Below, piece after piece: positions 12,101 through 63,728 of a stretch of DNA of 64,000 bases. The notes under the pieces are model-generated. The model saw nothing but the letters and a program-made list of their open reading frames with translations. It was not told the DNA's origin and did not search any database. The position numbers and the translations under genes are program-made. Positions within the stretch are counted from its first letter, which is position 1; each line of letters opens with the position of its first letter. Location: IMG/VR virus record IMGVR_UViG_3300027985_000918, positions 338,384-402,383 of that record; one strand, 5' to 3'.

Positions 12101-12144
12101 CGGGTGTTCCTCCAGTCTCTACCTTCGGCAGAGCTATAAACAAA

Positions 12145-26797: not shown

Positions 26798-26892
26798 GCG
26801 TGCTCCCCGGCTAAACCCCCAAGAAGGGCTTTCTGCACAGCTCAAACAGACCAACCGACCTTCCAACCATACCCGACAACCGGGCACTGGCC

Positions 26893-46073: not shown

Positions 46074-46611
46074 TGTTACCCCGGGTCTTGATCTTGGCCG
46101 CATCCGCAGCCTGCTTGATGCCTTCCAGTACCCCCCGGAGCTGTTCGGCCTGCTGGCCCAGCACCTCGATCTGAGAGAGGTCAGCGTTGGCAACAGACTC
46201 CCGCATCTTCGCCACGTCCACCACAGGAGCAGCGGCGAGCCGGGCATGATGCCCCTCCAAAAGAGGGAGGGGCAGCTTCTTCAACACTCCATCGAATTGG
46301 CGCACCGACCAGATCCCCTGGTCGGTAACCAGCACCCCCTCCGCCTTGACGGAAAGCATCCGGAGGCGGTGCTCCGGGATGTGGTGCTCTACAGGGCAAT
46401 CCCCCCGGCCCTGCCAAAGGCAGCTCCCGTACCCCCACTTGGAATCGTCCAAACCCCCCGGAGGAACGTAATGGAAGGCGATGTTGATGTGCTGTCCCAG
46501 CAATGGACGCAGGAGGTCCACGATGGGGGTGGGTTCCCCCTCAGAACCCTGGATACTGAGGGTTCCGTTGTGCTGTAGGACGATGCCCTCGGCGAGAACG
46601 ATATTGAGCAT
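46066..46611 (-). CDS. Hypothetical protein (181 aa)
   Basis: GAGGTG RBS; small overlap with the recD2 start. Confidence 0.55.
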   Translation of the reverse strand: MLNIVLAEGIVLQHNGTLSIQGSEGEPTPIVDLLRPLLGQHINIAFHYVPPGGLDDSKWGYGSCLWQGRGDCPVEHHIPEHRLRMLSVKAEGVLVTDQGIWSVRQFDGVLKKLPLPLLEGHHARLAAAPVVDVAKMRESVANADLSQIEVLGQQAEQLRGVLEGIKQAADAAKIKTRGNNG

Positions 46612-46669
46612 GGATCACCTCTTCAGTCGAGGACTACTACCCTTCTGAAGAGGTGTTTAGGCGGGTAGG

Positions 46670-49600
46670 CTACTTCTTCAACGCCCAGGGAAGCTGGCAG
46701 GACTCCCCGGAGCAGAACTTATCCTCGGACTCCACATCGTGGGTCCCTTCGTCAAAGTTCAGCGGCTTGATCCCCGACATCATACGGTGGTAGGTAGCCT
46801 CGTTGATGGTCTCGTAGGGAGCCTGCACATACCCGTGAGTCTTGAGGGGCAGCATCGAAATGGACTTAAGCTGATCCTCGAACGCCTCCAAGCAACGGGG
46901 GATTTCGGACACCTCTTCCGAACTGAAGGTCACCGTCACTGAGACCTGGTTGTCAGCCCAGTGCTTCTGGAGAGCAGCGGCCAGAGAGAACTGCTCCCAG
47001 ATGCTAACCTCGTCTTTGGCTCGGTCGAAGTTCTTCTCATGGACCGGGAACTCAATGACGCTGGTGTCGTCGGCGTAGTGGTCCGCCTCGACCGTGTACC
47101 CCGCCTCACGAGCCGCCTTGATGAGGGTGCTCGTGTTGGAGAGCCGGATGCGGCGGATGTAGAACTCGGAGTGAGGGAAGTGGATGCCTGGAGTCGCCCC
47201 CGCCAACAGACTGACGGTCCCCGACGGCTTGATCGAGGTAGTCTTCTTCGACAGGGGAACCCCCAGCCACTCACTGTAGATGCGATCGAGATCCCGAATG
47301 TACTCGTACCCGTCGTCACACCAGTTCAGGAACTCCCGGTGGCCGAGCTTCTGCCGAGCCTGGGCGATCCCGCTCATGGAGCACCCGATGCGGCGGTTCC
47401 GCTGCATCACCAGGTTGGCACGAGGGTCATGAGTAGGGACCAAGGTGACCGTCTTGGCGTACAGGTACGCCATCTTCAATGTCCGCTTGTAGTCGTCCAT
47501 GTCCGCATGGTGAGCGGGGTAGGTCTCCACAAGATTGCATTGGTATGTCAGCACGTTGCCGAACACACCCATATGGTTCTCGGGCTCATCGAAGCAGTAG
47601 GTCGTATGCAAACCATCCAGCTTTTCGACCTTGACCACCTTCTGTTCCCGAGCCCGGTCGAGGGGCTGTCCTTTCGGGTGTGCATTGTTCATGGTGTAAC
47701 GGTCCCCCAGGGAGGTCAGCACCTTCAGCCGGGTCGGGATCTCGGCACACTCGTAGCTGGGGATCGTAAGATAGTAGAGGTCATAGTTCCGGGTGCCGTA
47801 GTTGGTCTCGGCCCCCGCCTCAGCGAACATCCGAAGGCTGGCATGATTGACACCCACTCGCCGGAGAAGAAGCTGGGCGTCACGCAGCTTGGCCTCGGAA
47901 CCATACAGTCGGAACCCTTCCGCCACCGAACCGGCATTGGTGATGCTGCCATCGGCCTCGATCCACCCTGCCATGAATTCCAGAATGGAGCCCCTGTCCA
48001 TGCGGAGAATGTCCGGTGCCAGACCGGAGGTCTTGGACCGGAGGGACTCCGCAACATTCACCGGGAGGATGCCCTTCAGATTGAGGCGGTTGACCGGGTC
48101 CGTGTACCCCTCGACGATCTGCGGCTTGTGCCATGTGCCGTGGACGTCGAGATCCATGAGCTTGGCCTTTTCCCCGCAGATGGCGACCATCGGGTAGGTG
48201 TAGCCCCCCTCCCGATCCAGGTAGCCACCCCCTGCAAAAAGCCCCCACTCAAAAGCCGCCACGTTGTGCTCGCCGTCGATGGGGGCGTCGATGTCGAAGG
48301 AAATGACCTGACTGCCCTTGGTAAGCTCTGCCGTCTCAACTCGGCGGAATACACGCTTTCCGACCGGCTTGACGTGCCACCCGTGGTTCCCCGTGCAGTC
48401 CAGGTATGAACCGTCGGACAAATGGACCCGGAACAACTCCCGGCCCTCCCCCGTCACCCGAGGGGTCACCGTAGACCAGCCATCGCCATTCCAAATGTCC
48501 ACAGACTCTCCGGCCAGCTCGGAGATGGCCTGAATCCCTCGGCGGTGCTGGATGTAAGTGTCCGAACTCACACACAATTCAAAGGATTCGAGCGATTGCT
48601 CGCCGCAGGGATTCGTGCCCAGAATGCGGTGGTCTCGCCCATCCGGAGGGTCCCCCATGCGTCCGTACTGGCGGGCGTTGTCCAGCCAGAAGATGCCGGG
48701 CTCACCGTTGGCAGCGATTCGGGAGGCAACCGAGGTGTAGTCCATGCCGGGGTAGCCAAACACGCTGTTGTTCGACGCCCATCGGCGATCATTCAGGGGG
48801 TGAGCCTGGATGGCCTGCTCAACCTCACCCAGCTCCTCCTCCCACTGACCAATCTGGAAGTCCCCAGGGTTCTTCTCGATCAGGTTCCGCAACTCACTCT
48901 CTCGGGCGTACAGGGGAAGCAAGTCCGCATTGGACTTGAGGTTGATGAACTTCTCGTCGGAAGCCTGGCCGAACATAATCTCGGCGGTGTTGTGGACGAG
49001 ATAACCCCCCTGAACCACGAACTCACCGGCCTCCACCGAGATATCGTAAGTCTCATCCTCCCGCACCCGATGTTCGACGTAAATGACCTCTACGGGCACC
49101 AGCACCACATCCTGCCCCGTCAGGTCTTCCAGTCGGGCAATAGTGATCTGCCGGGAGGACCGGGACCACCGCATTTGACCGTCCTTCCACCCGCTAACCC
49201 CACCATCCAGCGCCATCTGCGAGGGGAACCCGTAATCGTACTGAGAACGGGAGGACTCCCGAGTCTCAGTGAACTTCAACGAGTGCGAGGCGACCTTTCG
49301 CTGAAACCCCGCCAACGCCTTCTCACCGACGACCGTGAGGTGAAAAAGAGGCTGCCAACCGTTCGTCTCACGGCTCTTGTCCTTGTGAAGCTGAAACCGG
49401 CTCGGAACACCCAACGAGGCCAACACCGCTTGGACCCCCTCCAAAAAAGAGGGGTACACGCTGGCAGCCACCACCAGAGGACGGTTCTTGATGGACCCGT
49501 CCGCATCCATCAAACCGGCCACGAACGCAGCCCGAACTTCGGGCAAACCCCGAAGGACGATGTCGGGAACCTCCAAGGTCGTCTTGGGCTGCTTGAACTG

Positions 49601-51148
49601 ACCCAGGAACTCCGCCAACTGCTTCGACTTGACCCGCACTTTAAAGCACTGGTCCCCATCACGGGGATCTTGGACGGTGACGTTCACCCCGAACCGCTGA
49701 AGACAGGACATCGCCCGTGCGGCGATGTCGCCCTGATCCCCGGCCACGGCGATGGACACCTCCTTGTCGTTGACGTACCCGTCCCCCTGGAACAACCCCA
49801 ACAGCCACGCCATCTCGGCATCCAGCTTTGGGATGGTGATGTTCGTACAAGTTGTGGAGCCCAAGGGCGAGGCGTAGTTATACGACGGAAACTCGGTGGC
49901 GACCCCCTCAATGAGCCGGTCCACGAAAACCATCCGGTCCCCCGGCTCCAACTCGTGCAGCTTTTTCCACGAATACCCGCCACTCACGTCAGAGATCACG
50001 GCGATCTTGTGCTTATCCGTCGCCTCGAAGACCCCCATCTGGGTAACGACCTGACTGATTGGCTGAACCCCCTGCTCCACCCAATCGGTGACCCGGCTCA
50101 ACCCCTGGGATGTCATCACCTGAGAACCCACCTTCACCTTCTCAATAGGCACCAACCCCTCTGCCGTATGAACAAGGGTGCCCGCCGGAAGGCAACGACG
50201 AACCCCCCCGGCCACCACACACTTCCCGATGAAGTTGAACACGTCTACGATCTGATCGGACTGGATGCGGTAGGGCTTACCCTGGCCCTCGAACAGCACC
50301 TTGATCTCGTCGATGTCCGTGGGGTTGCCATCCCACCCCTCCCGCTGGGCCCCGTTGGGCTCGACCGTCCGGAACTTGACGGTAACCCCCTCGGGCAGCA
50401 GAAGACGGGTAACCCCCTCGACCAACCGCTTCAGGGGGGCGGCGCCGGAAGCGATCCCACCAAAGCCGAGGATGGCAGTTCCCCGAGGACGAACCTTCGT
50501 GTAGTCGATGGTGAGGGGGAACTGACCACGACCCACGAAGCTGTTCAGGACGGTGCGAGCCAGCTCGACCCAGCCCTCACGGCTGTCCTCCACGAGAAAC
50601 GGGGTGTCCGTCGTCTTGGGGGTCTGGATTCGGGCCTTCCCCTCACCACGGGTGTCCCCGCCTACCCCGACCCCCAGCATAGACATGTCCATGAGGAACG
50701 TGAAAGGGGCGGCGAACTCCTGGTCAATGTCCTTCGTGCTGACGAAAGCGCAGTTTTGCAGAGCGGCAGCCCCCTTGTCGTAGATGAGGTCAGTCCCCAT
50801 CATCCAGAGCCCACGGCCCGGGGGCGTCCATTTGAAGTCCCAGAGCCGCTGGAACATGTCCTGGGCGCTCTTCTGGGCCTTGGGTTCGTTCCACATCAAC
50901 CCCATCGTCAGGCAGTGGTCCTTCTGGATGTTGAAACACCCTTCGACCACCCGCTGGCATGTCTGCCAGAACTCTTCGGTTGTCCCGTCCGAGAGTGTCC
51001 GGGCATATGTGCGCTTGTACGTGAAGTACCCGAGGCCTCCGAAGCCCCACTCCGGCTGCTTCCCCTGGAATTGCTCCAAGAAACCTTGGCTCAGCTTGAA
51101 CGCTCGCACCTTTCTGTCGGTCACGGGGGGGTTGGGATTGAAAATCAT
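46670..51148 (-). CDS. nrdJ: Class II (adenosylcobalamin-dependent, monomeric-type) ribonucleotide reductase with two inteins
   Basis: YKRTYAR, PPGRGLW, NCAFVS, GGVRR|TAEI, ASNNSV, GEPG, NPCGEQ..EL|CNLVE, RRIGCS, KPSGTVS, C-terminal CSGESC; start refined to 51148. Confidence 0.93.
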   Translation of the reverse strand: MIFNPNPPVTDRKVRAFKLSQGFLEQFQGKQPEWGFGGLGYFTYKRTYARTLSDGTTEEFWQTCQRVVEGCFNIQKDHCLTMGLMWNEPKAQKSAQDMFQRLWDFKWTPPGRGLWMMGTDLIYDKGAAALQNCAFVSTKDIDQEFAAPFTFLMDMSMLGVGVGGDTRGEGKARIQTPKTTDTPFLVEDSREGWVELARTVLNSFVGRGQFPLTIDYTKVRPRGTAILGFGGIASGAAPLKRLVEGVTRLLLPEGVTVKFRTVEPNGAQREGWDGNPTDIDEIKVLFEGQGKPYRIQSDQIVDVFNFIGKCVVAGGVRRCLPAGTLVHTAEGLVPIEKVKVGSQVMTSQGLSRVTDWVEQGVQPISQVVTQMGVFEATDKHKIAVISDVSGGYSWKKLHELEPGDRMVFVDRLIEGVATEFPSYNYASPLGSTTCTNITIPKLDAEMAWLLGLFQGDGYVNDKEVSIAVAGDQGDIAARAMSCLQRFGVNVTVQDPRDGDQCFKVRVKSKQLAEFLGQFKQPKTTLEVPDIVLRGLPEVRAAFVAGLMDADGSIKNRPLVVAASVYPSFLEGVQAVLASLGVPSRFQLHKDKSRETNGWQPLFHLTVVGEKALAGFQRKVASHSLKFTETRESSRSQYDYGFPSQMALDGGVSGWKDGQMRWSRSSRQITIARLEDLTGQDVVLVPVEVIYVEHRVREDETYDISVEAGEFVVQGGYLVHNTAEIMFGQASDEKFINLKSNADLLPLYARESELRNLIEKNPGDFQIGQWEEELGEVEQAIQAHPLNDRRWASNNSVFGYPGMDYTSVASRIAANGEPGIFWLDNARQYGRMGDPPDGRDHRILGTNPCGEQSLESFELCVSSDTYIQHRRGIQAISELAGESVDIWNGDGWSTVTPRVTGEGRELFRVHLSDGSYLDCTGNHGWHVKPVGKRVFRRVETAELTKGSQVISFDIDAPIDGEHNVAAFEWGLFAGGGYLDREGGYTYPMVAICGEKAKLMDLDVHGTWHKPQIVEGYTDPVNRLNLKGILPVNVAESLRSKTSGLAPDILRMDRGSILEFMAGWIEADGSITNAGSVAEGFRLYGSEAKLRDAQLLLRRVGVNHASLRMFAEAGAETNYGTRNYDLYYLTIPSYECAEIPTRLKVLTSLGDRYTMNNAHPKGQPLDRAREQKVVKVEKLDGLHTTYCFDEPENHMGVFGNVLTYQCNLVETYPAHHADMDDYKRTLKMAYLYAKTVTLVPTHDPRANLVMQRNRRIGCSMSGIAQARQKLGHREFLNWCDDGYEYIRDLDRIYSEWLGVPLSKKTTSIKPSGTVSLLAGATPGIHFPHSEFYIRRIRLSNTSTLIKAAREAGYTVEADHYADDTSVIEFPVHEKNFDRAKDEVSIWEQFSLAAALQKHWADNQVSVTVTFSSEEVSEIPRCLEAFEDQLKSISMLPLKTHGYVQAPYETINEATYHRMMSGIKPLNFDEGTHDVESEDKFCSGESCQLPWALKK
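47540..48574 (-). mobile_element. Intein 2 in nrdJ (345 aa), Gln-terminal, LAGLIDADG-type endonuclease
   Basis: Starts CVSSDT, ends VLTYQ before extein Cys (CNL); endonuclease motifs GLFAGGG (degenerate) and AGWIEADG. Confidence 0.88.
48989..50194 (-). mobile_element. Intein 1 in nrdJ (402 aa) with LAGLIDADG homing endonuclease
   Basis: Starts CLPAGT, block B TDKH, ends LVHN before extein Thr; LGLFQGDG and AGLMDADG motifs. Confidence 0.93.
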
Positions 51149-51216
51149 GTTGTCTCCATCTGGCGAACAGTACACCGCCAGGTCAAACGGGTGTCATGTG
51201 GTGACCCTGAGGCAAC

Positions 51217-54102: not shown

Positions 54103-54256
54103 CCTCAGAAGTTCCAGAGGAAGACTACCGAAAAGTTTCAGAACGCAACAGTGAGGGCGGAAGTTTGCTCTGGACTGAAACTTTCGCCCCCTGAAAGTTC
54201 CTCAAGGGCAAAGTTTTGCCCCTGAAAGTTTGGTGTGCCCAAACTTCGGGCACACC
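54103..54256. repeat. Intergenic array of eight AASTT boxes with GC-rich inverted repeats
   Basis: AAGTT or AACTT at 54109, 54133, 54161, 54179, 54195, 54211, 54226, 54242; perfect 9-bp stem ggtgtgccc/gggcacacc (54232-54256). Confidence 0.65.
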
Positions 54257-54428
54257 CCACCTATACCATAGCTGGGTTGACGGCTACCGTAAGGGCTGCC
54301 TACGTATGGGGAGCATCCTCAGTAGGATCTGTAGGAGGCTCAGTTGTTGGGGCTCTACGAGTTTTCGTATCGCTTTCGGGATCTGGTGTAGTTACGGTCG
54401 TCCTTCGGACTCCCTGGGAGCATTGATC

Positions 54429-54731
54429 CTACTGATCCATCCTAATGCTCTCCCGGAAGGTTTCCCCGAAGGACGAAGAGGGCTGCCTGAACCCCAGGCA
54501 TCCGAACCGCCTGGGAGACTCCCTCTCGGGGCCATACCTCCTGTCGGAGGGGTAGGCCACGCCGAGGCTGACCTTCCCACCCGAGGGGTCGTTCGGGACC
54601 CGCAGGGTGGGAACTAGTGGTTCAAAGACCATGCGACCTGGCGGCGTCCTGCACAGCTCAACGGCTTCCGCTCTGGTTTCCCAGTTGCCCAGGGGGATGA
54701 CCCAGGCACACCCCCAGTAGGGGGAGGTCAC
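54429..54731 (-). CDS. Possible hypothetical protein (100 aa)
   Basis: GTG-start ORF in a gap; no motif or clear RBS. Confidence 0.25.
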   Translation of the reverse strand: MTSPYWGCAWVIPLGNWETRAEAVELCRTPPGRMVFEPLVPTLRVPNDPSGGKVSLGVAYPSDRRYGPERESPRRFGCLGFRQPSSSFGETFRESIRMDQ

Positions 54732-54787
54732 GGCGACTATACCCGAAAAGTGAAGGGTGGGGAACGGGGAAGATCGAAACCGGGGGA

Positions 54788-55978
54788 TTAGCCTCGCAGG
54801 AGGGGAACCAGGTGCTGGCGGAGTTCGGGGTGTCCGGAGGCCAGCTTACACACGTCCTGGCGGAGGATAGCCTCCATCTGGAACCCGTACTTGCGGAACC
54901 GACCGAACGTGCTCTCGTCCTCCATGATGTCGGACCAGGAGATGTCCTGGGTCTCCACACCCAACGTATCCAGCCTGTTCCGCACCGCCCGCTGAAGAGA
55001 CTGGTTTCCTTCCATGGCCTGGAAAATGACAGGCATGGCGGCCATCCAGTGCTTTTTGACTTTGACTTTTGCCGCAGCCTCTCCTTTGCTGTCCATCCCC
55101 GGAACGATGTATCCGGCAGCTTCCGCAAGCTCCTTCCCCGAGATGAACTCTCCACGATTCAGAGCCTCCCACCAAGCCTGCATGGTGGGGATGGCGGCAG
55201 TGGGAATCTTCGTGTCGATGATCTTTTTGATAGCCTGCCGGACGGCCTTCCCCAGCGGGTCGTTGGAGAAGAAAACCATGTCGAACACGTCCCTCGACAC
55301 CTGAGAGGGATCAGCCACGCCACCATGGCCGCCTTCCTCGGTCTGCCCGTGCGGTCCGGTGTCCAGAGTAATCCCCTGGATCCTCTGGTGGCGACGGAGC
55401 TTGTTGATCACGTTAAGAGCGGCCTTCTTGAGGCTCTTGCCAAGGGCCCCAGCGGCAACTTTGCCCGGGGATTCAGTACCGTCCAGGATGCCCGCCGAGA
55501 GGAATTTGCCGGCTTCCCAGAATTTGTTCTTGATCTTGCGGCGGACGACCTCCCCTTCTTCATCGACGTCGGCTCCCAGGCCAGCAACGCCGTCCTGGAC
55601 GACATCCTCCCCGGTCATGTCGGGGACCCCCGAGCGGCTGAGCCAACCGTCGAGTTGCCGGGTGAGCATCCGCACCATCCCCGTAGAGTTCGGGAGGAAC
55701 CAGTCGGGGTCCATGTCAGGGACGTACTCGGCCAGGTGGGCCTGGGCTTTCTTCAGCCCTCTCATGGGGTTCTGAGCCCAGGTGAACTCCCGGACCCCCG
55801 CTGCCCCCTCAAGGATGACCAGGCGGGCCATCACGTCGTAAAGGCCGTCCTCCGTCAGGGCCTTCTTCAGGTGGCGGTACGCCAGCCGGATGGCGGCCTG
55901 TTTCCCTCGGCTGGCAAAACGCTTATGAGAGGTTTCCCGGAGCGTAATCAGAGCCAAGAGCTTCTGGTACATGTTCAT
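54788..55978 (-). CDS. Sigma-factor-like protein carrying the C-terminal KLA..PELRQHLVPLLR motif (396 aa)
   Basis: Region-2-like EDVVQD..LKKAALNVINKLRR; HTH-like ISGKELAEAAG; tag motif at the extreme C-terminus. Confidence 0.55.
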   Translation of the reverse strand: MNMYQKLLALITLRETSHKRFASRGKQAAIRLAYRHLKKALTEDGLYDVMARLVILEGAAGVREFTWAQNPMRGLKKAQAHLAEYVPDMDPDWFLPNSTGMVRMLTRQLDGWLSRSGVPDMTGEDVVQDGVAGLGADVDEEGEVVRRKIKNKFWEAGKFLSAGILDGTESPGKVAAGALGKSLKKAALNVINKLRRHQRIQGITLDTGPHGQTEEGGHGGVADPSQVSRDVFDMVFFSNDPLGKAVRQAIKKIIDTKIPTAAIPTMQAWWEALNRGEFISGKELAEAAGYIVPGMDSKGEAAAKVKVKKHWMAAMPVIFQAMEGNQSLQRAVRNRLDTLGVETQDISWSDIMEDESTFGRFRKYGFQMEAILRQDVCKLASGHPELRQHLVPLLRG

Positions 55979-56081
55979 GCTATGATCCTCATTGGAGCCG
56001 GGAACCCCCCGGGCCTGTTCCTGTTGAAGGTGGGGTATAGGAACCCTACCGATCTCATCCCCATGTCGGACCTTCTGGTGC

Positions 56082-56109
56082 TTGACTTCCTAAGCCAACT
56101 TGGTATGGT
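56082..56109 (+). promoter_or_regulatory. Host sigma70-type promoter for the only plus-strand gene
   Basis: TTGACT (56082-87), 16-nt spacer containing extended -10 TG (56101-02), TATGGT (56104-09). Confidence 0.6.
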
Positions 56110-56208
56110 TGTCCAGTCGGGGAGCGACCCAGACCCACTCGGAACGAGATTTCGTCTACCGTCGCTGCCCGGAATTTTTCCAAGGCCACAGGCCAAGGAG
56201 GATGCCGC

Positions 56209-57732
56209 ATGTCGGTTCCGCAGCAGCCCGGGAATTTCGCCCGGGGGGAGCTTCACCAAGCTCTCTTCGCCCACTTCGCCAAGTCCCCCATTAACACGCC
56301 GCACGATGCCAGACAGGTTCTCGACCAGGTGATGATCGATCTGGGAAGGGACGATGACCGTAGTCGCAAAGCCATCCGGAAAAGTTTCTACAAGATGGTG
56401 GATGGCGGCTACATGCGTCAGACTGGCCGGGGTTCCTGGGCGTTGACCGAGTCGGGGATGGAGGTGTTCATCTCCAAGTCCAATGGACAGAAACCAGCCC
56501 CCAAAAAGAACATCGACGCTTCACCTCTCCCCAAGCCGAAGCCCCCGACCCCCGAGCAGAGTTACGCCGCCCAGCTCGCCAACAACGTAGGTACGTTGGC
56601 GATGAGGGATGATTTGTCTTTCACGATGCGGACTCGTACCCTCGACGAGCTGAACCGGGACATCATCGACACGTCGATGCAGGTGGACAAGGTGGAGAAA
56701 GCCACAGAGGCCGCACTGGAGCAGATTCGGGAGACCCGCCGAATGGTCGAAAAGCTGAAGATGGACCGGGCCATCTCTGAAGCTCGGGCCACAAAGGAGA
56801 GAGTCCAGAAGCGCCTCGCCCAGGTGTTGGACACCCAACAGAAGGTGTACGCTGAGCTGGCTTCTCTCCGGGCCGAGGTCAACGCTTTCCAGACTGAGAC
56901 TCCTAGCATGGATAATGCTGTCGTTGTCCCTGAGAGCAACGACGGGGACGACGGGGACGAGGGGGACGAGGGGGACGAGGGGGACGACGACCCGGACCTA
57001 TCGGGGCCGGACGATCACCGTCGTTCGGCCCCTGACAAGAACTACACCTCTGAGTGGTTGAGCACTCACCTTCGCCCCACGGGGCGAAGCGGCGAATCAA
57101 AATTGATGCGGGCCATGAAGGCTGCCGTCCGCTCGAAATGTCCGATCTCCGCTCAGTCTGATAAAGTGGAGGACCACATCCAGGAGTTCCTGTTGAAGCT
57201 GGTTCGTCGGGACGGCCTCCGTAAGAAGATCTTGGCAGGCGACAAGATCACCTACAGCCATCTGGCCTCCTACGCCGTCCGTAGCGCCTGGACGGACGCC
57301 CGGAACGCCGGCACAGAGCCGGTGGAGCGGGAGATGTACGGTGCCCGGACGGAGAGGGAGCGGAGAGAATGGGGGGACACCCCCCTCCCAGAACTCCCTC
57401 AGACAAAGCCAGACTCCCGACTCATTTGGGGAGGGGAGGAAGATGGAAACTCCGCCATCGTCGGCGTCGTCGACGCCGCCAACCCTCCTGACGTTTTGTT
57501 CCAGCAGCGGAAAGACTTCGAGGTTATGTGGTCTCGTATCGAGACCGTCATGCGGTCTCAGAAACCCCAAGCGTGGGAGCGGTACTCCGGAATCTTGCGG
57601 ATGAAGTACCAAGGGCTTTCGACAGACGACATTGCCGAGAAAGAGAACGTCTCTACCCACCGGGCGGCATCCCTGATCCAGGAAGCCAAGTCTGCCATTC
57701 GTGCGGTGGGGTTCGAGAGTCTTATGGCTTAG
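56209..57732 (+). CDS. ECF-like sigma factor fused to N-terminal winged-HTH, coiled coil and acidic linker (507 aa)
   Basis: AAGGAGG RBS; wHTH-like FYKMVDGGY..TGRGSWALTESG; sigma2 VEDHIQEFLLKL..LASYAVRSAWTDAR; sigma4 ILRMKYQGLSTDDIAEKENVS..SLIQEAKSAIR. Confidence 0.75.
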   Translation: MSVPQQPGNFARGELHQALFAHFAKSPINTPHDARQVLDQVMIDLGRDDDRSRKAIRKSFYKMVDGGYMRQTGRGSWALTESGMEVFISKSNGQKPAPKKNIDASPLPKPKPPTPEQSYAAQLANNVGTLAMRDDLSFTMRTRTLDELNRDIIDTSMQVDKVEKATEAALEQIRETRRMVEKLKMDRAISEARATKERVQKRLAQVLDTQQKVYAELASLRAEVNAFQTETPSMDNAVVVPESNDGDDGDEGDEGDEGDDDPDLSGPDDHRRSAPDKNYTSEWLSTHLRPTGRSGESKLMRAMKAAVRSKCPISAQSDKVEDHIQEFLLKLVRRDGLRKKILAGDKITYSHLASYAVRSAWTDARNAGTEPVEREMYGARTERERREWGDTPLPELPQTKPDSRLIWGGEEDGNSAIVGVVDAANPPDVLFQQRKDFEVMWSRIETVMRSQKPQAWERYSGILRMKYQGLSTDDIAEKENVSTHRAASLIQEAKSAIRAVGFESLMA

Positions 57733-58655: not shown

Positions 58656-61600
58656 TCAAGTCCTCGGCGGTTTGCTACGTCCAACGTAGGGGCTTGCCAT
58701 CAACTCCATCACCTCACGGTCCAACCGCACGTTTCCGGCGTCCCTCTTGGTGATCTCGTCCCACTCCAGCCCCAGGTTCTTGGCCTGTGCGTCTTTGATG
58801 ATACGGTCGAACAGGTCTGACTCCATCGACTGGAACCAGCGGCGGATTTCATCGAGGGTGGCATCGAATTCGTCCAGGTTCTCCGGGTCGTGGGAGAACG
58901 TGGCGTCGATGGTCACCTCATCCACGGGTTGCTCCTGCCCCTGACGCCAGGACCGGGCGGTCCTTTGCTTCATGTTCTCCGAGCTGAACGTGTCCCGGTC
59001 GAGGTGGATGACCGTGTCGAACGACTGGAGATTGTGCCCGAATTGGTATGTCTGCCCCAGCAGAGTACATGTCTTGATCCTGCTGTTGGGACTCACGACC
59101 TCCTTGAGCACGAACTGCTGCCAGCGGTCCGCTTTGTAGTGTACGTTGTAGAGACGGTGCGCCGGCAGTTCAGGCCAGCGCCGATATGCCTTGGCCTTGA
59201 ACGGTAGCGGGATGCGGGCCTTGCCCCCTTGGAGATTAGACAGGGCCGCACGGGCTTTGTCCTCGTCCCCCCGGAAGATGCGGACCACCTCTCGGGGGTC
59301 CACGTCAAAGGCGACCTCGTGGACCTCCCCGCCAGAGCTGTAGATGTTGATGGAGTCGTTTAGGGCGACGACATGCCAACCCGGGATAGTCTTCGCCAGA
59401 TGCTCTCCCGCCATCCGGCAGAGCTTCTTGTCATCTGCGAACACCAGCGCCCGGCTCGCCCCCTCGGCAGCTTCCAGCTTATCCGAGATGGTTTTGGTCA
59501 TGGCCTCCAGCTTAGGGTTCCCCAGGCGGTCCCCGATGCCCCGCAGGTCCTCCGGGGTGTACTTCTCCCCCCACGCCTTCAGCACCCTCCAGAGAGCCCT
59601 TGGGACAGGTTTTCCGTCAGGGGTCTCCCGAGTCTCCAACATGTGGGCCACGTCCTGCATAGCGTCTCGGGGATAGTTGGACAGGCCGTTCAGGAGCTTC
59701 AAAATCGGCCGGAACTGAAGCCCAAAGGCCCGTTCGATCTCCGGGTCTCTTGCCTCAGGGATGACTTTGCCGTCCGGGGCAAAGCCTCGGTCACGGAACT
59801 TCGCTACCAGTCCCCTCATGAGACGGGGCATCGTGGAGGTCACGTCCCGGTAGATGGACTCTACAGCGGAATCCATCTCCACAGCCAGGGTTTCCGGGCG
59901 CAGTGCGGGCAGCTCGAACTCTTCGACGTCGGTTTTGTCAGCGTAGAAGACGTTGCTCTTCACCCAGGTGTCCAGGTCATTTTTGACCAGGGGGTCCTCT
60001 TTGACGCCGACCACCCGGCCGCCCACCCGATCGGTAAATCGCTCCATGAACCGTCGCATCTCTACCCGGTTCCGCTTGGCTCCCTCGGACTTGGACGACA
60101 GGTCGATGTTGTTAGCGATGGCTGCCAACAGATACGCCTGCTCGGGCTCCCGCTCCATCGGAGAAGCGGAGAGCAGGATCTTTCTTGGGTGGAAGATGCC
60201 GTTGGCAGATTTGAACTTGGAAGAACTGGGGCTCGCCAGCTCCTGGGCCTCATCGAAAAAGATGGCGGTGTAGAGTTGGATGTCCCAGACCTTGCCCTCA
60301 GCACCCTGCTTCGGGCTCATTCCCCGCTCACGGCTCTTCCAGTACCCCACAGCTTTGAGAGACCGTGGGATGGTCCCTGAGGCTGCGGACCGACTGAACT
60401 CACTGTACGAGATGATGTCCACGACATCCAGGAGACTGGTCGAGGCGTCCCTCTCCAGAAACCCTCGGATCTCCTTGGGCAAGTTTCCCTTGAGGGAACC
60501 GGGGGACACGAACAGAAACCGTCCGTTGGTCTGGATGTTTTTGCCAGTGCTGGGGTCTCTATATGTAGCACCAATTTCCCCGAGTCCGTCCCGGGTGAGT
60601 TTTTGCATCATGCCGATAGCAGTGAGGGTGTTGTGATTAATCACCCCGTTGCCCACGAAACAGTGAGAGGGGTGATCTACTTCGATGTCCATCACGACTG
60701 CCACGGAGTCCTCGCAGACCTCGATGGGGTCGTAGAAGAACCGGCGGTCCACCACATGTGAGATGGCCTTGAAGCTGGGGTGGTCATGGCAACAGAGCGC
60801 CGCTGCTTTGCCGAGCATGCCGGACAGGAATGAGTAGGTGGGGTTCCGGCGGCCCCGTCGTACATGGTTCACCGTGTTGTAGAACGCTGGTCCATGCTGT
60901 CGCCGGAACCCGCTGACGTTAGTGTCCCCTTGGATCAGCATCTCATCGAAAAGCCGGCCAACCTCCACGGCAAGGTGGGGCACTGTGTCGAGATTGGAGT
61001 TCCGGCTCGAAGGTGTATTAACGAAAGCTGCCTGTTTCCGCTCGGACACGAACCCGATCTCCTGCCAGTACCGGACGGCATCCTCCCCTGTGATAGTCAC
61101 TCGCCAGTACGTGTGATCGAAACCTTTCACCTTCTTGGGGTGACGACTGCACAGGACGTTGAATCGGAGCAGGAGAACCTGAAGCTCCCGACCCAACTGC
61201 TCAGAAGCGGTCGTGAACTCGATGTTGGCACGAGATCCCTGAACATGGCCCTCAGCATCCACCAGCCCACGAATGAACTGGCGCATCGTCTCTTTGGTGG
61301 AACGTAGGATGATTTCTGGTACAGCCTTGTCCTTGGCGACCCCCATGCCGACCCCCATGCGAAGCAGGTACTCCCGCAGGAATCGACTCATCACCACGAT
61401 GTCCTTGTCGGGCTGGGTTTCCAAGCCCAGCAGGCGATGCAGCAGAGCTTCGATGTCTGCTCGGACCTCGGGGTTTTTCTCCGGGCACTGGCTGATTGAG
61501 AACAGCTTGTGATGGTTCGTCCATCCCTCGGCCACGATGTACCCGAGAAGCCGCCCCATCTCAGGAGACATCCGGTCAGGTACCGGGAAAATGTTCACGT

Positions 61601-63728
61601 TGCCGTTCTGGAACGTGATGTCAGGGTTCCGGCTTGGCTGCTGGAAGTCTTCCGCTACGGGAACCGAGAGAGCCGGGTCTTCCAACGGGAACGGGACGGG
61701 ATTGCGTTCGACACACAGGTAGTCCCCGGCCTCAAGTTCCGGGGTTTTCACCCACGTCTCGTTGCCATCCGGGGTACGAACCAGTAGCGGGTGGATGAGA
61801 GAGCCTTCCACCTCGTATCCACGACGAGTCCGCACCTTCAATGTGGGCTTGGGGCCACCATAGTAGAAGTTCTTGACGGGGAGCGCTTCGCCATTGACCA
61901 GCACGGACCAGCCCTCAACGGGAGCCACGCTGTTGGGTTCGGTCAGGCCGGGGTTCATGTCACGGATGGGTGTGAGGCCCTTGTCAGTAACGATGAGGGT
62001 GTCCTCCCGAACGCATTTGCCCACACCAGTGTCTAGGGCACACACCCCATTGTTCCCTCGGGCATCCATCCAAGCTAGAGCCTGCTTCTGCTTGGTCAAC
62101 AGGTCGAATTTTTTGGTCTCGTCGGTGTCCCGGTTCTTCCAGGTTGTCTTGAACCCACCCAGGTTCTCGGCGGCGTAGAACCTCAGGTTCTCTTCAGCCG
62201 TGGCCTGTTCTGCTCTGGCGAGATCCTTGAAGTACGTCTTCACCACATCCAGGGCACCCTTCGAGAGGGACATCCCCTTCAGGCTCTCCTTGATGACGGA
62301 GAAGTCCTTGGGATCGAAGTAGAAGGCGGCAGCCTTGGAACCTTCGACTTTGTGGTAGGTGATGGAGGGAATGCAGCCCCGCTTCGCCCCTGTGTTGCAG
62401 GCCATCGCTTTGATGGCGTTCCTTAGCTCAGCGTACTGGCGGGTTCCCGGGATTTTGAGGAAGAGCTTCTGCTCCTTCTCCACGAATTTCCGGTTGCCGA
62501 TTTTCTTCTCCACGTCCACTTCGGCCGTGGTCACATAGGGTTCCCGGTCTCCAGGATCGATGCGGACGGGGACTTTGCGCTCTCGGCCGTTCTTGGCTTC
62601 GTAGGCATAGGCTGTACCCTCGATGAGCCTCCCCTGGCTATTGACCATGTCGTCGAGGAACACGCCCTTGTAACGCCCAGACACGATGACCTTGACGTGA
62701 TCGATTCGGATCTGTCCCGTCTCCGGGTCCGAGATCATCATCGGATACTTCTTCGTGGCGAAGATCTTGGTAAGGCGACCCTGCTTGGCCTTGTCATCGG
62801 TGAGGGAGTCCCACTCGATGTTGCCTTCAAGTCGGTCCAGCTTCTCGTCGGGGACAGATCGCAAATCTTCGGGAGGGACCTCCGTGCGTGTCGGGACCCT
62901 CCCCAACCTCTCCCGAAACTGCTCCTGTTCCCGCCGTTTGTCCTTATACTCGTCGAATGTGAGGATCTGGCCATCACGGTCGAAGATGACCTTTTCCCCC
63001 GTTTTCGGGTCCTCGCCGATGCTGACGGGCCGCCCCATGACAAAGGACCGACCGGGGATCATCCCCGAAGAAGCGATCTGCTCCTGGATGCCCGCATCGA
63101 TCTCCTGGAGAGCCTGCCCTTTCTGGAGCATGAGCGCATAGCTCTCGGGGTCATCGTCTTTAAGCTGCTCGATGGCCTCCTGCTTGGGAGACATCTTGCG
63201 GAACAGAACCCAACGCTCCTGCCCCCGCTGCTGCGGGCGCATGTAGATACCCTTGTCCCTCGTGATGGCTTCGATGAGGGGAATCATCACGTTGTTGATT
63301 TGGGCCCATGTCGTTGGGTTGTCGGTCCGACCTTGCTCCAGACGCCCCAAGAGAGAGTTGAGCATAGAGCGAGCTTCGGCGATCTGATTGACTACAGCCG
63401 GGCTGAGGAGTCGTTGGTCCACGGGGGACTTCACCCGAATCAGGAGATTTGCCGCCCGCTTGAACTGTTGCCGGAGGTCATCCGGCACCGGCTCCCCCAG
63501 GGAGATCCGCTTGAGCAAGATGTAGAAACGGAAGAACTCCAATCCCCTGACCGTGAATGCCCGTCGAAGTTGAGTCCAGATCGCAGGCGGCAGGTAGTTT
63601 TCCGCCTGCGCTAGCTCTTTCTTGCGGGCCTTCGCCTCGGTGGGGGTCAGCTTGACGGTATCGGGCAAACCCCCACTCCAGGACTCAGCAACCCGTCGAA
63701 TAGCCCCCTCGGTGATCATGCCGGTCAT
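58656..63728 (-). CDS. SF2 (SNF2-like) helicase/translocase with long N-terminal extension and an intein (1690 aa precursor)
   Basis: Walker A LDTGVGK|T (split by intein), IFFDEAQ, LSASPM, VFADD, GHNLQ, QRTARSWRQGQ. Confidence 0.85.
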   Translation of the reverse strand: MTGMITEGAIRRVAESWSGGLPDTVKLTPTEAKARKKELAQAENYLPPAIWTQLRRAFTVRGLEFFRFYILLKRISLGEPVPDDLRQQFKRAANLLIRVKSPVDQRLLSPAVVNQIAEARSMLNSLLGRLEQGRTDNPTTWAQINNVMIPLIEAITRDKGIYMRPQQRGQERWVLFRKMSPKQEAIEQLKDDDPESYALMLQKGQALQEIDAGIQEQIASSGMIPGRSFVMGRPVSIGEDPKTGEKVIFDRDGQILTFDEYKDKRREQEQFRERLGRVPTRTEVPPEDLRSVPDEKLDRLEGNIEWDSLTDDKAKQGRLTKIFATKKYPMMISDPETGQIRIDHVKVIVSGRYKGVFLDDMVNSQGRLIEGTAYAYEAKNGRERKVPVRIDPGDREPYVTTAEVDVEKKIGNRKFVEKEQKLFLKIPGTRQYAELRNAIKAMACNTGAKRGCIPSITYHKVEGSKAAAFYFDPKDFSVIKESLKGMSLSKGALDVVKTYFKDLARAEQATAEENLRFYAAENLGGFKTTWKNRDTDETKKFDLLTKQKQALAWMDARGNNGVCALDTGVGKCVREDTLIVTDKGLTPIRDMNPGLTEPNSVAPVEGWSVLVNGEALPVKNFYYGGPKPTLKVRTRRGYEVEGSLIHPLLVRTPDGNETWVKTPELEAGDYLCVERNPVPFPLEDPALSVPVAEDFQQPSRNPDITFQNGNVNIFPVPDRMSPEMGRLLGYIVAEGWTNHHKLFSISQCPEKNPEVRADIEALLHRLLGLETQPDKDIVVMSRFLREYLLRMGVGMGVAKDKAVPEIILRSTKETMRQFIRGLVDAEGHVQGSRANIEFTTASEQLGRELQVLLLRFNVLCSRHPKKVKGFDHTYWRVTITGEDAVRYWQEIGFVSERKQAAFVNTPSSRNSNLDTVPHLAVEVGRLFDEMLIQGDTNVSGFRRQHGPAFYNTVNHVRRGRRNPTYSFLSGMLGKAAALCCHDHPSFKAISHVVDRRFFYDPIEVCEDSVAVVMDIEVDHPSHCFVGNGVINHNTLTAIGMMQKLTRDGLGEIGATYRDPSTGKNIQTNGRFLFVSPGSLKGNLPKEIRGFLERDASTSLLDVVDIISYSEFSRSAASGTIPRSLKAVGYWKSRERGMSPKQGAEGKVWDIQLYTAIFFDEAQELASPSSSKFKSANGIFHPRKILLSASPMEREPEQAYLLAAIANNIDLSSKSEGAKRNRVEMRRFMERFTDRVGGRVVGVKEDPLVKNDLDTWVKSNVFYADKTDVEEFELPALRPETLAVEMDSAVESIYRDVTSTMPRLMRGLVAKFRDRGFAPDGKVIPEARDPEIERAFGLQFRPILKLLNGLSNYPRDAMQDVAHMLETRETPDGKPVPRALWRVLKAWGEKYTPEDLRGIGDRLGNPKLEAMTKTISDKLEAAEGASRALVFADDKKLCRMAGEHLAKTIPGWHVVALNDSINIYSSGGEVHEVAFDVDPREVVRIFRGDEDKARAALSNLQGGKARIPLPFKAKAYRRWPELPAHRLYNVHYKADRWQQFVLKEVVSPNSRIKTCTLLGQTYQFGHNLQSFDTVIHLDRDTFSSENMKQRTARSWRQGQEQPVDEVTIDATFSHDPENLDEFDATLDEIRRWFQSMESDLFDRIIKDAQAKNLGLEWDEITKRDAGNVRLDREVMELMASPYVGRSKPPRT
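60630..62015 (-). mobile_element. Intein in helicase P-loop (462 aa) with LAGLIDADG homing endonuclease
   Basis: Starts CVREDT after GVGK, block B IH, ends VINHN before Thr; LGYIVAEG and RGLVDAEG motifs. Confidence 0.93.

What the first reader, a model, noticed from the sequence alone, without database searches (positions are those of the whole stretch)
55979..57732. Divergent sigma pair; the only plus-strand gene has a host sigma70 promoter and an unusual wHTH-coil-ECF fusion
Seen: TTGACT-16-TGnTATGGT promoter and AAGGAGG RBS drive a 507-aa protein made of a winged helix, about 100 aa of coiled coil, an acidic (GDE)n linker and sigma2 + sigma4 domains. It faces away from the tagged sigma-like gene. 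Inference: the immediate-early switch of a phage transcription cascade; the N-terminal arm may act as a built-in anti-sigma or a DNA-tethering module.
Basis: partly seen in the sequence, partly recalled or inferred. Interest (0 to 1): 0.6.

Follow-up and report, generated by a model that had tools for sequence, protein, structure and literature searches.

The report
Early sigma factor of huge phage
A 402-kb uncultured phage from a hydrothermal-vent metagenome carries a very divergent sigma factor fused to a DNA-binding winged helix, placed behind a conserved host-type promoter and a structured RNA leader; it belongs to a large family I found no description of, and it probably redirects the host RNA polymerase to phage genes.

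Summary
ORF 56209-57732(+) encodes 507 aa. It has a winged helix (aa 12-91), one ~95-aa heptad helix (134-229), an acidic (GDE)n linker (net charge -16) and a two-domain ECF-like sigma module (279-506).

The TTGACT-16-TGgTATGGT promoter is one of only seven such sites in the 402-kb genome. All seven are intergenic, and three precede tRNA arrays. The promoter recurs at the same distance from the start codon in 7-8 of 9 orthologous loci.

New points:
- The winged-helix-plus-sigma fusion is the ancestral design of a large uncultured family (548 clusters at 50% identity). The coil and acidic stretch are an insertion found in a small subclade.
- The 5'UTR holds a covarying three-tier stem-loop.
- The phage has at least two more sigma-like genes and a NusG-like gene. 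No RNA polymerase domain was detected.

Sigma identity rests on consistent but sub-threshold profile and fold matches. Early timing, RNAP binding and the role of the N-terminal arm are inferred. The sigma-like nature of the divergent 396-aa neighbour is unproven.

Verdict: a new variant of a known kind (a phage sigma in a transcription cascade), of moderate interest. A conserved ~350-nt structured RNA with no Rfam match lies next door and deserves its own look.

The parts
56082..56109 (+). Sigma70-type promoter: -35 TTGACT (56082-87), 16-nt spacer, extended -10 TGgTATGGT (56101-09). Predicted TSS at about 56116.
   Evidence: One of 7 such sites in the genome, all intergenic. Conserved in 7-8 of 9 orthologous loci at 95-110 nt from the ATG.
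56119..56170 (+). Leader stem-loop SL1. Outer stem P1 pairs 56123-28 with 56161-66. Middle stem P2 is GAC/GUC. An apical hairpin P3 closes it. It starts a few nt after the predicted TSS.
   Evidence: Independent MFE folds give the same three-tier hairpin in 7 of 9 loci. RNAalifold finds 9 P1 pairs, 7 of them with compensatory changes. None of 500 shuffles reached the observed values, except 2 of 500 for pair types, and the slide controls were far lower. The covariance model finds a single copy in the genome and copies in 7 loci.
56179..56199 (+). Second small hairpin SL2 abutting and partly overlapping the Shine-Dalgarno sequence.
   Evidence: MFE folds show a hairpin just upstream of the SD in most of the loci. 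No covariation test was made.
56195..56201 (+). Ribosome-binding site AAGGAGG, 7 nt before the ATG.
   Evidence: GGAG is conserved in the aligned loci.
56209..57732 (+). CDS of 507 aa: a wHTH-coil-acidic-sigma fusion (P0001).
56242..56481 (+). N-terminal winged helix (aa 12-91), Mrr_N-like.
   Evidence: pLDDT about 90. Foldseek matches PadR, LmrR, MarR and Z-alpha winged helices with TM about 0.55-0.70. It is homologous to the N-domain of the short family members (hhalign Prob 95%, E 2.6e-8). Mrr_N is the only Pfam family hit by more than one member (3 of 22, best E 0.0053).
56608..56895 (+). Long helix (aa 134-229) with heptad periodicity; a predicted coiled coil.
   Evidence: Weak SMC/Rad50 coil hits. 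The dimer test gave no answer.
56896..57027 (+). Disordered acidic linker (aa 230-273) containing (GDE)n, net charge -16.
57043..57309 (+). Sigma2-like helical domain (aa 279-367).
   Evidence: pLDDT about 95 in the C-terminal model. VIA match to EcfG sigma2 (5uxx_C): Z 6.7, rmsd 3.4 over 85 aa. The TIGR02937 alignment spans it.
57310..57492 (+). Long sigma2-sigma4 linker (aa 368-428) holding the family's most conserved motif (T369, P371, R374, E375, G378-T381, E384, R385 invariant).
   Evidence: The structure model has low confidence here.
57493..57726 (+). Sigma4-like HTH domain (aa 429-506).
   Evidence: Sigma70_r4_2 at E=0.018 here, and hit by 12 of 17 relatives (best 9.9e-6). VIA matches to CnrH, SigW, SigD and SigR region 4: Z 7.1-7.5, rmsd 2.5-4.2.
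54788..55978 (-). Divergent partner gene (396 aa), conserved next to the sigma gene in all 9 loci. A paralog lies beside a second sigma gene at G000 83.7-84.5 kb.
   Evidence: Sigma-likeness is weak and inconclusive.
56036..56041 (-). CCTATA motif (minus strand) 58 nt upstream of the partner's start codon; a candidate phage-specific promoter element.
   Evidence: TATAG/CTATA is kept in all 9 intergenic regions. Genome-wide, 18 of 36 CCTATA sites are intergenic against 11% expected, mostly 42-63 nt before start codons.

Best explanation
Main claim. The gene encodes a highly divergent sigma70-superfamily (ECF-like, sigma2-linker-sigma4) factor of a roughly 400-kb phage in which no RNA polymerase domain was detected.

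Proposed mechanism:
1. Host RNAP with its housekeeping sigma starts at the conserved TTGACT-16-TGnTATGGT promoter early in infection.
2. The transcript begins with a conserved stem-loop leader. This probably stabilises the mRNA or serves as a regulatory site.
3. The protein then replaces the host sigma on core RNAP and directs it to phage promoters. Candidate elements are the GGTAAC and CCTATA motifs that are enriched upstream of phage genes.
4. It acts as one step of a cascade that also includes at least two more phage sigma-like proteins and a NusG-like factor.

The N-terminal arm. The Mrr_N-like winged helix is an ancestral, obligatory part of this sigma family. It most likely supplies an extra DNA contact, such as an upstream element or phage-specific DNA. 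In this subclade a coiled coil and an acidic linker were inserted between the winged helix and sigma. The coil may act as a spacer or dimeriser. The acidic stretch may act like region 1.1 of primary sigmas.

Shown versus inferred. Shown: the anatomy, the conservation, the promoter footprint, leader covariation, and profile- and fold-level sigma similarity. Inferred: RNAP binding, early timing, target promoters and the function of the arm.
For: Sigma identity:
- TIGR02937 sigma70-ECF aligns to aa 314-498 over profile positions 25-162 of 165 (E 1.3e-3). It is hit by 13 of 17 family members (best 4.8e-8).
- Sigma70_r4_2 is hit by 12 of 17 members.
- All 50 listed Foldseek PDB hits of the C-terminal model (pLDDT 81) are sigma factors or sigma-containing RNAP complexes. 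The alignments cover both domains in order.
- The VIA wide search is topped by SigB, HrdB, Taq sigmaA, CnrH, SigW and SigL (Z 7.4-7.9). Sigma2 alone matches EcfG at Z 6.7.
- 8 of the 10 nearest ESM Atlas clusters are sigma factors.

Promoter: 7 sites genome-wide, all intergenic. Three precede tRNA arrays. The promoter is conserved with constant spacing to the ATG across 9 diverged loci.

Leader.

Cascade context:
- Further sigma-like genes at G000 85015-86199 and at window 26171-26887.
- A NusG-like gene at window 26893-27438.
- No Rpb1 or Rpb2 domains.
- GGTAAC: 88 of 200 sites are intergenic. CCTATA: 18 of 36 are intergenic. Both compare with 11% expected.
- Published comparative work states that jumbo phages lacking an RNAP encode sigma factors to recruit the host enzyme (PMC7824862).

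Architecture: the N-domain is homologous across the family. There are 548 clusters, and in 127 of 161 sampled members the N-domain directly abuts the sigma part. Synteny is conserved in 9 loci.
Against: - Every curated threshold is missed by this protein. Sigma70_r4_2 scores 15.1 bits against a cutoff of 25.7. TIGR02937 scores 18.4 against 42.9. Sigma70_r2 gives no hit.
- Profile searches of PDB sequences give no significant sigma hit.
- Fold scores are middling (Z below 8, Foldseek E about 1e-2). The tool itself warns that such values can reflect common helical arrangements.
- No transcript data exist, and the host is unknown.
- Absence of a phage RNAP rests on Pfam models, which miss phiKZ-type enzymes. 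The T7-type search had an uninformative control.
- No promoter motif can be assigned to this sigma.
- The linker is far longer and more conserved than in canonical ECF sigmas.
Confidence: 0.6

Rival explanations
1. The N-terminal arm is autoinhibitory (a built-in anti-sigma). The acidic (GDE)n stretch and/or the winged helix folds back on sigma2/sigma4, or occupies the RNAP DNA channel like region 1.1 of primary sigmas. This would keep the free sigma off DNA until it is on core RNAP or until a signal arrives. It is a rival only for the role of the arm, not for sigma identity.
For: A 46-residue segment with net charge -16 sits immediately N-terminal to sigma2. That is the position of acidic region 1.1 in group-1 sigmas (established knowledge). 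Acidic inserts recur at the same junction in other family members, namely P0115, P0057 and P0074. No separate anti-sigma gene is evident beside the gene.
Against: Most family members have no acidic stretch and no insert at all, so autoinhibition cannot be the family-wide function of the N-domain. AF2 shows no confident packing of the arm on the sigma domains (pTM 0.31, linker pLDDT below 50).
Confidence: 0.25
2. The N-terminal winged helix anchors the sigma to specific DNA sites, possibly as a dimer through the coil. Candidates are the palindromic GAAAsTTTC arrays that occur almost only at the two sigma/partner loci, or phage-modified DNA (an Mrr_N-like reader). The protein would then be a sigma and an activator or autoregulator in one chain.
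For: The wHTH is conserved family-wide and its recognition helix is basic. Some members carry 2-4 tandem wHTH copies. There is a weak Mrr_N relationship. Of 29 AAAsTTT sites, 16 fall in four clusters, all at the two sigma/partner loci, and their core is palindromic. Arrays are present in all three coil-bearing relatives (window, L002, L004) and in one of six short-sigma loci.
Against: Nothing links the arrays directly to this protein. Other DNA-binding proteins, including the partner and the other sigmas, are equally good candidates. The arrays are absent from most short-sigma loci although those proteins keep the wHTH. The coil homodimer prediction gave no answer. No array lies in the sigma gene's own promoter region.
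Confidence: 0.2
3. The protein is not a working sigma. It could be a sigma-like decoy or an ordinary transcription factor, for example a PhyR-type sigma mimic that titrates a host regulator, or a two-HTH repressor, and it would not bind core RNAP.
For: All sigma family scores are below the curated cutoffs. PhyR's sigma-like domain is among the structural matches (3t0y_C, Z 5.5). The C-terminal HTH also resembles ParB and KorA HTHs by sequence.
Against: Both domains match sigmas in the correct order and spacing. The linker, which in ECF sigmas threads through RNAP, is the most conserved segment of the family. The phage has several sigma-like genes and a NusG-like gene but no detected RNAP, so it needs specificity factors.
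Confidence: 0.1
4. The sigma70-like promoter is not the operative one. The gene would instead be a middle or late gene driven by a phage factor, and the hexamers are conserved for another reason.
For: There are no expression data. The -10 TATGGT/TAGAGT is imperfect. The local count equals the chance expectation.
Against: The genome-wide restriction to intergenic DNA, the association with tRNA arrays and the cross-locus conservation at fixed distance argue for function. No GGTAAC or plus-strand CCTATA motif lies upstream of the gene.
Confidence: 0.1

Closest known systems
ECF (group 4) sigma factors, e.g. E. coli sigmaE/RpoE, P. aeruginosa AlgU, M. tuberculosis SigL and SigH
   Same: A two-domain sigma2-linker-sigma4 layout of about 230 aa without sigma3. 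These are the best fold and profile matches.
   Different: All curated thresholds are missed. The linker is about 60 aa and carries an invariant motif. There is an N-terminal wHTH, here with a coil and an acidic linker as well. No cognate anti-sigma gene is present. The protein is encoded by a phage.
Phage sigma cascades: SPO1 gp28 and gp33/34, T4 gp55 (with gp33), and the sigma factors of RNAP-less 'group 2' jumbo phages (PMC7824862; PMC13401047 abstract)
   Same: An early gene behind a host-type promoter encodes a sigma that retargets host core RNAP. The genome holds several phage sigma-like genes and no detected phage RNAP.
   Different: Those sigmas are not reported to have an N-terminal winged helix (my knowledge; not tested here). 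There is no detectable sequence relationship. The temporal order here is untested.
ECF sigmas with fused regulatory extensions (ECF41 and ECF42 types with C-terminal SnoaL or TPR domains; from my own knowledge)
   Same: The concept of a regulator or sensor built into the sigma polypeptide instead of a separate anti-sigma.
   Different: Here the extension is N-terminal and is a DNA-binding-type wHTH. No homology was tested or found.
Region 1.1 of primary (group 1) sigma factors (from my own knowledge)
   Same: A strongly acidic segment directly N-terminal to sigma2.
   Different: Here it is a low-complexity, disordered (GDE)n stretch rather than a folded domain. It is present only in this subclade and a few others.
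Mrr_N (PF14338), the N-terminal winged helix of Mrr-type restriction enzymes
   Same: The same wHTH type, with the G-x-W-x-L-T-x-x-G wing. It is the only Pfam family hit by several N-domains.
   Different: The scores are far below the cutoff (best 0.0053; 13.3 bits for this protein against 29.5). Here the domain is fused to a sigma, not to a nuclease.

Membership tests
Sigma70 superfamily, ECF-like (TIGR02937 / PF04542 + PF08281) | Sigma4 (-35-binding HTH) domain recognised by PF08281 or PF04545 | tested here: inconclusive
   This protein scores 15.1 bits (E 0.018), below the cutoff of 25.7. 12 of 17 relatives hit it (best 9.9e-6), and P0007 carries a precomputed PF08281 hit. Fold matches to region-4 structures give Z 7.1-7.5 at rmsd 2.5-4.2 A.
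Sigma70 superfamily, ECF-like (TIGR02937 / PF04542 + PF08281) | Sigma2 (core-binding, -10-melting) domain recognised by PF04542 | tested here: not met
   No PF04542 hit for this protein or any of 17 relatives. Support is at fold level only: EcfG sigma2 at Z 6.7, rmsd 3.4 over 85 aa. The TIGR02937 alignment does cover the region.
Sigma70 superfamily, ECF-like (TIGR02937 / PF04542 + PF08281) | Whole-protein score above the curated TIGR02937 cutoff | tested here: not met
   18.4 bits against 42.9. The best relative reaches E 4.8e-8, and 13 of 17 relatives hit the model.
Sigma70 superfamily, ECF-like (TIGR02937 / PF04542 + PF08281) | Binds core RNAP and confers promoter-specific initiation | not testable with these tools
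   This needs biochemistry. The host is unknown and the complexes exceed the size limit of the complex tool.
Phage early gene transcribed by host sigma70-type holoenzyme | Sigma70-type -35/-10 promoter at a suitable distance upstream, non-random and conserved | tested here: met
Phage early gene transcribed by host sigma70-type holoenzyme | Transcript start at the promoter early in infection | not testable with these tools
   No RNA runs hold the locus. Only DNA contigs from vent metagenomes do.
wHTH(N-domain)-sigma fusion family defined here (profile A5) | N-domain homologous to the family N-domain, followed by the sigma module with the invariant linker motif | tested here: met
   hhalign Prob 95%, E 2.6e-8 for the N-domain. 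The sigma module scores 362.8 bits against the family profile. The invariant linker residues are present.
Mrr_N winged helix (PF14338) | Score above the Pfam gathering threshold | tested here: not met
   13.3 bits against 29.5 for this protein. 3 of 22 N-domains hit it (best E 0.0053). A paralogous N-domain protein at G000 about 34.8 kb scores E 0.025 over profile positions 4-83 of 87.
Coiled-coil dimer | Heptad periodicity and self-association | tested here: inconclusive
   Heptad a/d enrichment occurs in two registers with a stutter near aa 177-184. The self-association prediction gave 'no answer'.
Partner 396-aa protein as a sigma-like protein ('sigma pair') | Detectable sigma2 and/or sigma4 homology | tested here: inconclusive
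   There are no family hits for the protein itself. hhalign against the sigma family aligns aa 65-192 to the sigma2 region at P=0.029 with 6 sequences and P=0.0056 with 14. 1 of 14 members hits Sigma70_r2 at 0.037, and 1 of 14 hits PRK12539 at 0.017. The nearest named language-model cluster is a viral Sigma70_r2 cluster at 0.90.

The most novel reading that the evidence does not exclude
This may be a new class of sigma factor that carries its own sequence-specific or modification-specific DNA anchor. An Mrr_N-like winged helix, here dimerised or spaced by a coiled coil, would bind palindromic GAAAsTTTC arrays or phage-marked DNA. One polypeptide would then be both the promoter-specificity subunit and the enhancer-like activator or autoregulator of a phage sigma circuit. 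Its own expression would be controlled through a previously undescribed structured leader RNA, and the module would also include a neighbouring ~350-nt structured RNA with no Rfam match.
Probability: 0.15. Interest if true: 0.8.

Novelty: new variant of a known kind. Interest (0 to 1): 0.55.

Why it matters
Huge phages without their own RNA polymerase must reprogram the host enzyme, yet almost nothing is known about how uncultured ones do it. This locus defines a large family of phage sigma factors (at least 548 clusters at 50% identity) that I found undescribed in the literature I searched. Its members are permanently fused to a winged-helix domain and sit in a conserved gene neighbourhood. 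The gene lies behind a host-type promoter and a covarying leader RNA.

If the winged helix gives the sigma a second DNA contact, that would be a mode of promoter selection not known for bacterial sigmas. It would also be a compact, portable part for synthetic transcription control.

The locus offers testable cis-elements as well: two candidate phage promoter motifs, palindromic site arrays confined to the sigma loci, and a structured RNA with no Rfam match.

Tried and rejected
- PDB sequence searches with the family profiles gave only generic HTH hits (ParB, KorA) and no significant sigma. They were not used as evidence.
- A Foldseek search with the full-length model mixed wHTH and sigma hits at E about 0.1. 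I therefore refolded the C-terminal module alone.
- RNAalifold on the raw MAFFT alignment of whole 5'UTRs gave no structure because the 3' stem halves were misaligned. Trimming to the stem-loop by reference solved this.
- My first P3 columns were mis-registered, so only P1 and P2 are claimed from that count.
The step was replaced by reference-based alignment.
- Complex prediction on two copies of the coil (aa 128-234) returned 'no answer' (score 0.00). This is neither support nor evidence against.
- The look-up of sequencing runs found only DNA contig holders from vent metagenomes. Read laying was therefore not used, because contigs cannot show transcript starts.
- The search for a T7-like RNAP had a silent control and is uninformative.
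- A simple longest-ORF gene call was misleading at 60% GC. It was replaced by a codon-usage model.
- The idea that the wHTH-sigma fusion is unique to this phage was rejected.
Full report
Context. The window is the last 64 kb (338384-402383) of a 402,383-bp IMG/VR virus record with 107-bp direct terminal repeats and 60% GC. The DNA is held by hydrothermal-vent metagenome runs, and no RNA run holds it. A codon-usage gene model gives about 350 genes and 89% coding. Around the locus lie replication and nucleotide-metabolism genes: a RecD2-like helicase, a class II ribonucleotide reductase with an intein, a clamp-loader delta'-like protein and an SNF2-type helicase with an intein.

Observation. The ORF 56209-57732(+) of 507 aa is real. 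TTGACT lies at 56082-87, followed by a 16-nt spacer and TGgTATGGT at 56101-09. AAGGAGG lies 7 nt before the ATG. In a 6-kb neighbourhood one such promoter match is what shuffles give, so the local count proves nothing. The wider picture does. TTGAC[AT]-N16-18-TAnnnT occurs only seven times on both strands of the genome. All seven sites are in the 11% of the genome that is intergenic. Three sit in front of the phage's tRNA arrays, and four of the seven carry an upstream hairpin plus an A-tract. In nine orthologous loci from unrelated metagenomes the exact pattern is kept in seven, always 95-110 nt from the start codon. An eighth locus has a perfect extended -10. The surrounding intergenic DNA is otherwise only about 50% identical. 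I take the promoter as functional and of the host sigma70 type. The start site (about 56116) and the timing remain inferred.

Protein anatomy. AF2 on the family alignment gives four parts:
- A confident winged helix at aa 12-91.
- One helix spanning aa 134-229.
- A disordered acidic stretch at aa 230-273.
- Two helical domains at aa 279-367 and 429-506, joined by a low-confidence linker.

The long helix shows heptad hydrophobic periodicity in two registers. The acidic stretch has 18 D/E in 46 residues, with net charge -16. The winged helix matches PadR, LmrR, MarR and Z-alpha domains.

Is it a sigma? By curated thresholds it is not. Sigma70_r4_2 scores 15.1 bits against 25.7. TIGR02937 scores 18.4 against 42.9. 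Sigma70_r2 is not hit. PDB sequence profiles find no sigma. The weak signals are nevertheless coherent:
- TIGR02937 aligns across both domains (profile positions 25-162 of 165). It is hit by 13 of 17 homologs, with a best E of 4.8e-8.
- Sigma70_r4_2 is hit by 12 of 17 homologs.
- A separate model of aa 270-507 (pLDDT 81, with the sigma2 part at about 95) returns only sigma factors or sigma-containing RNAP complexes among the 50 listed Foldseek PDB hits. The alignments cover both domains in order.
- The exhaustive VIA search is topped by SigB, HrdB, Taq sigmaA, CnrH, SigW and SigL (Z 7.4-7.9). Sigma2 alone matches EcfG at Z 6.7 and rmsd 3.4 A.
- Eight of the ten nearest ESM Atlas clusters are sigma factors, several of them viral.

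The Z values are in the range that the tool warns can be non-specific. I therefore put sigma identity at about 0.85, not higher. The sigma2-sigma4 linker is about 60 aa and contains the family's most invariant residues. This is atypical for ECF sigmas. It suggests a conserved contact inside RNAP.

Family and evolution. Word searches found 17 homologs. A full HMM search found 548 clusters at 50% identity (355 at E<=1e-10). GenBank phages hold one weak relative, in an uncultured 485-kb phage. Most members are 340-380 aa, with a 110-130-aa N-domain that directly abuts the sigma module; 127 of 161 sampled members have the N-domain. The winged helix of this protein is homologous to that N-domain (hhalign Prob 95%, E 2.6e-8). 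The N-domain's only recurring Pfam match is Mrr_N, and that match is weak.

The wHTH-sigma fusion is therefore ancestral. About 180 aa (a Pro-rich linker, the coil and the acidic stretch) were inserted at the junction in a subclade comprising this protein, P0002 and the L004 ortholog. The L004 gene call was truncated; the full ORF is 524 aa. The junction is an insertion hot spot. Other members carry extra wHTH copies, P/A/V-rich or acidic linkers, and in one case (P0074) another coil followed by an acidic stretch.

Synteny. In all nine loci the sigma gene is the lone plus-strand gene. It is divergent from a 338-399-aa partner, with clamp-loader and RNR genes beyond. The partner has no family hit. 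A paralog of it lies beside a second sigma-like gene at G000 83.7-86.2 kb. Profile-profile comparison aligns partner aa 65-192 with the sigma2 region of the sigma family, at P=0.029 rising to 0.0056 with a deeper alignment. Isolated members graze sigma models, and a language-model search names a viral Sigma70_r2 cluster. This is suggestive but inconclusive, so 'sigma pair' is unproven.

The partner's upstream region keeps a CCTATA element in all nine loci. This motif is 4-5-fold enriched in intergenic DNA genome-wide and typically lies 42-63 nt before start codons. The two divergent genes therefore appear to use different promoter types.

Leader RNA. The 100-nt 5'UTR is conserved. Independent folds give the same three-tier stem-loop in 7 of 9 loci. 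On a trimmed alignment, RNAalifold finds an outer 9-bp stem with compensatory changes in 7 pairs and an invariant GAC/GUC middle stem. No shuffle out of 500 reached the observed paired fraction, compensatory-pair counts or covariation score (2 of 500 reached the pair-type count). Sliding the partners collapses pairing from 81% to 24-49%. A covariance model finds the element once in the genome and in seven loci. It begins a few nucleotides after the predicted start. This position fits a 5'-terminal stabilising hairpin or a protein-binding regulatory site; that reading is an inference. A second hairpin abuts the Shine-Dalgarno sequence.

Cascade context. The genome encodes the following:
- A second ECF-like protein of 394 aa (TIGR02937 42.2 bits, over the cutoff when neighbouring segments are added).
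- A 238-aa protein with a region 4 that passes the Pfam threshold (Sigma70_r4_2, 39.8 bits).
- A NusG-like protein next to that 238-aa gene.

No Rpb1 or Rpb2 domains are detected. This fits the published picture that RNAP-less jumbo phages use their own sigmas to recruit the host enzyme (PMC7824862). The caveat is that Pfam misses phiKZ-type polymerases. GGTAAC lies in 47 of 179 upstream regions against about 6 expected, with a strand bias, and 88 of its 200 sites are intergenic. Together with CCTATA it is a candidate phage promoter element. Which sigma reads which motif cannot be told.

Role of the arm. Three observations bear on it. The wHTH is universal in the family. Its copy number varies. 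The palindromic GAAAsTTTC sites form four clusters that lie only at the two sigma/partner loci, and arrays are also present in L002, L004 and L017. These favour a DNA-contact role, but nothing ties the arrays to this protein. An autoinhibitory role for the acidic stretch, like region 1.1, is plausible only for the subclades that have one. The coil dimer prediction gave no answer.

Verdict. The object is a new variant of a known kind: a phage-encoded sigma in a host-RNAP takeover cascade. It belongs to a large family in which a winged helix is permanently fused to the sigma, and my literature searches turned up no description of such a fusion. I left out no step for safety reasons.

Noticed in passing
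window 54361-54759 (minus strand); also L002 6091-6510, L004 5771-6183, L014 1137-1428, L017 1194-1519, L016 1247-1555, L005 6502-6667, L006 6442-6573: The 'gene-free' gap between the 182-aa gene and the partner gene holds a sequence that looks better conserved than the coding DNA around it. It has non-3n indels and many compensatory changes: RNAalifold predicts 60 pairs, 27 of them compensatory. nhmmer finds it at the same syntenic place in 8 of 9 loci. There is no Rfam match even at E<=10, and ARAGORN finds no tmRNA. It is a candidate new structured phage RNA of about 330-400 nt.
   Followed up: partly
window 54132-54231; G000 83266-83313, 83513-83597, 84579-84667 (L020 about 1099-1430 and 2412-2500): Arrays of AAAsTTT sites with palindromic core GAAAsTTTC. 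Of 29 sites in the genome, 22 are intergenic and 16 form four clusters. These clusters lie only at the two sigma/partner loci. The locus at 84.6 kb contains a 52-nt tandem duplication carrying them. Similar arrays occur in L002, L004 and L017. They are a likely operator array for an unknown dimeric regulator of the sigma circuit.
   Followed up: partly
window 26171-26887 (-) and 26893-27438 (-): A 238-aa protein with a sigma region 4 that passes the Pfam threshold (Sigma70_r4_2, 39.8 bits) but has no detected sigma2. It lies directly next to a NusG-like gene (PF02357 at 23.3 bits, plus KOW). These are further phage transcription factors.
   Followed up: partly
G000 83674-84546 (+) and 85015-86199 (-) (L007, L020): A second ECF-like sigma (394 aa, TIGR02937 at 42.2 bits) lies convergent with a 290-aa paralog of the 396-aa partner. 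The sigma-plus-partner module therefore occurs twice in the genome.
   Followed up: partly
whole genome G000 (upstream regions): Two candidate phage-specific promoter motifs. (A/G)GGTAAC(A/C) lies in 47 of 179 upstream regions (about 6 expected), and 88 of its 200 sites are intergenic. (G)CCTATA(G) has 18 of 36 sites intergenic, mostly 42-63 nt before start codons. No fixed -35 partner was seen for GGTAAC.
   Followed up: partly
G000 9128-14380, 45969-49396, 57202-57275, 158402-158477(c): ARAGORN tRNA genes, mostly in two plus-strand arrays, each preceded by a sigma70-like promoter with an upstream hairpin and A-tract. One tRNA has anticodon CUA (an amber suppressor, labelled Pyl by ARAGORN). 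This could hint at stop-codon reassignment or suppression in part of the infection cycle.
   Followed up: no
G000 about 34783-35550 (+) (L013 ORF 1258-2253): A separate protein carries the same N-domain as the sigma family (profile E 0.0035; Mrr_N E 0.025 over nearly the whole model). It is followed by a Cys-rich C-terminal part instead of a sigma module.
   Followed up: no
window 46670-51175 (-) and 58656-63728 (-): The class II ribonucleotide reductase and the SNF2-type helicase each carry an intein with a LAGLIDADG homing endonuclease. The intein is absent from the RNR of L002 and L005 and present in L004.
   Followed up: no
L004 7608-9182 (+): The public gene call for the ortholog (393 aa, P0003) starts at an internal Met. 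The full ORF is 524 aa and includes the winged helix. Database architectures of this family are therefore partly truncated.
   Followed up: yes
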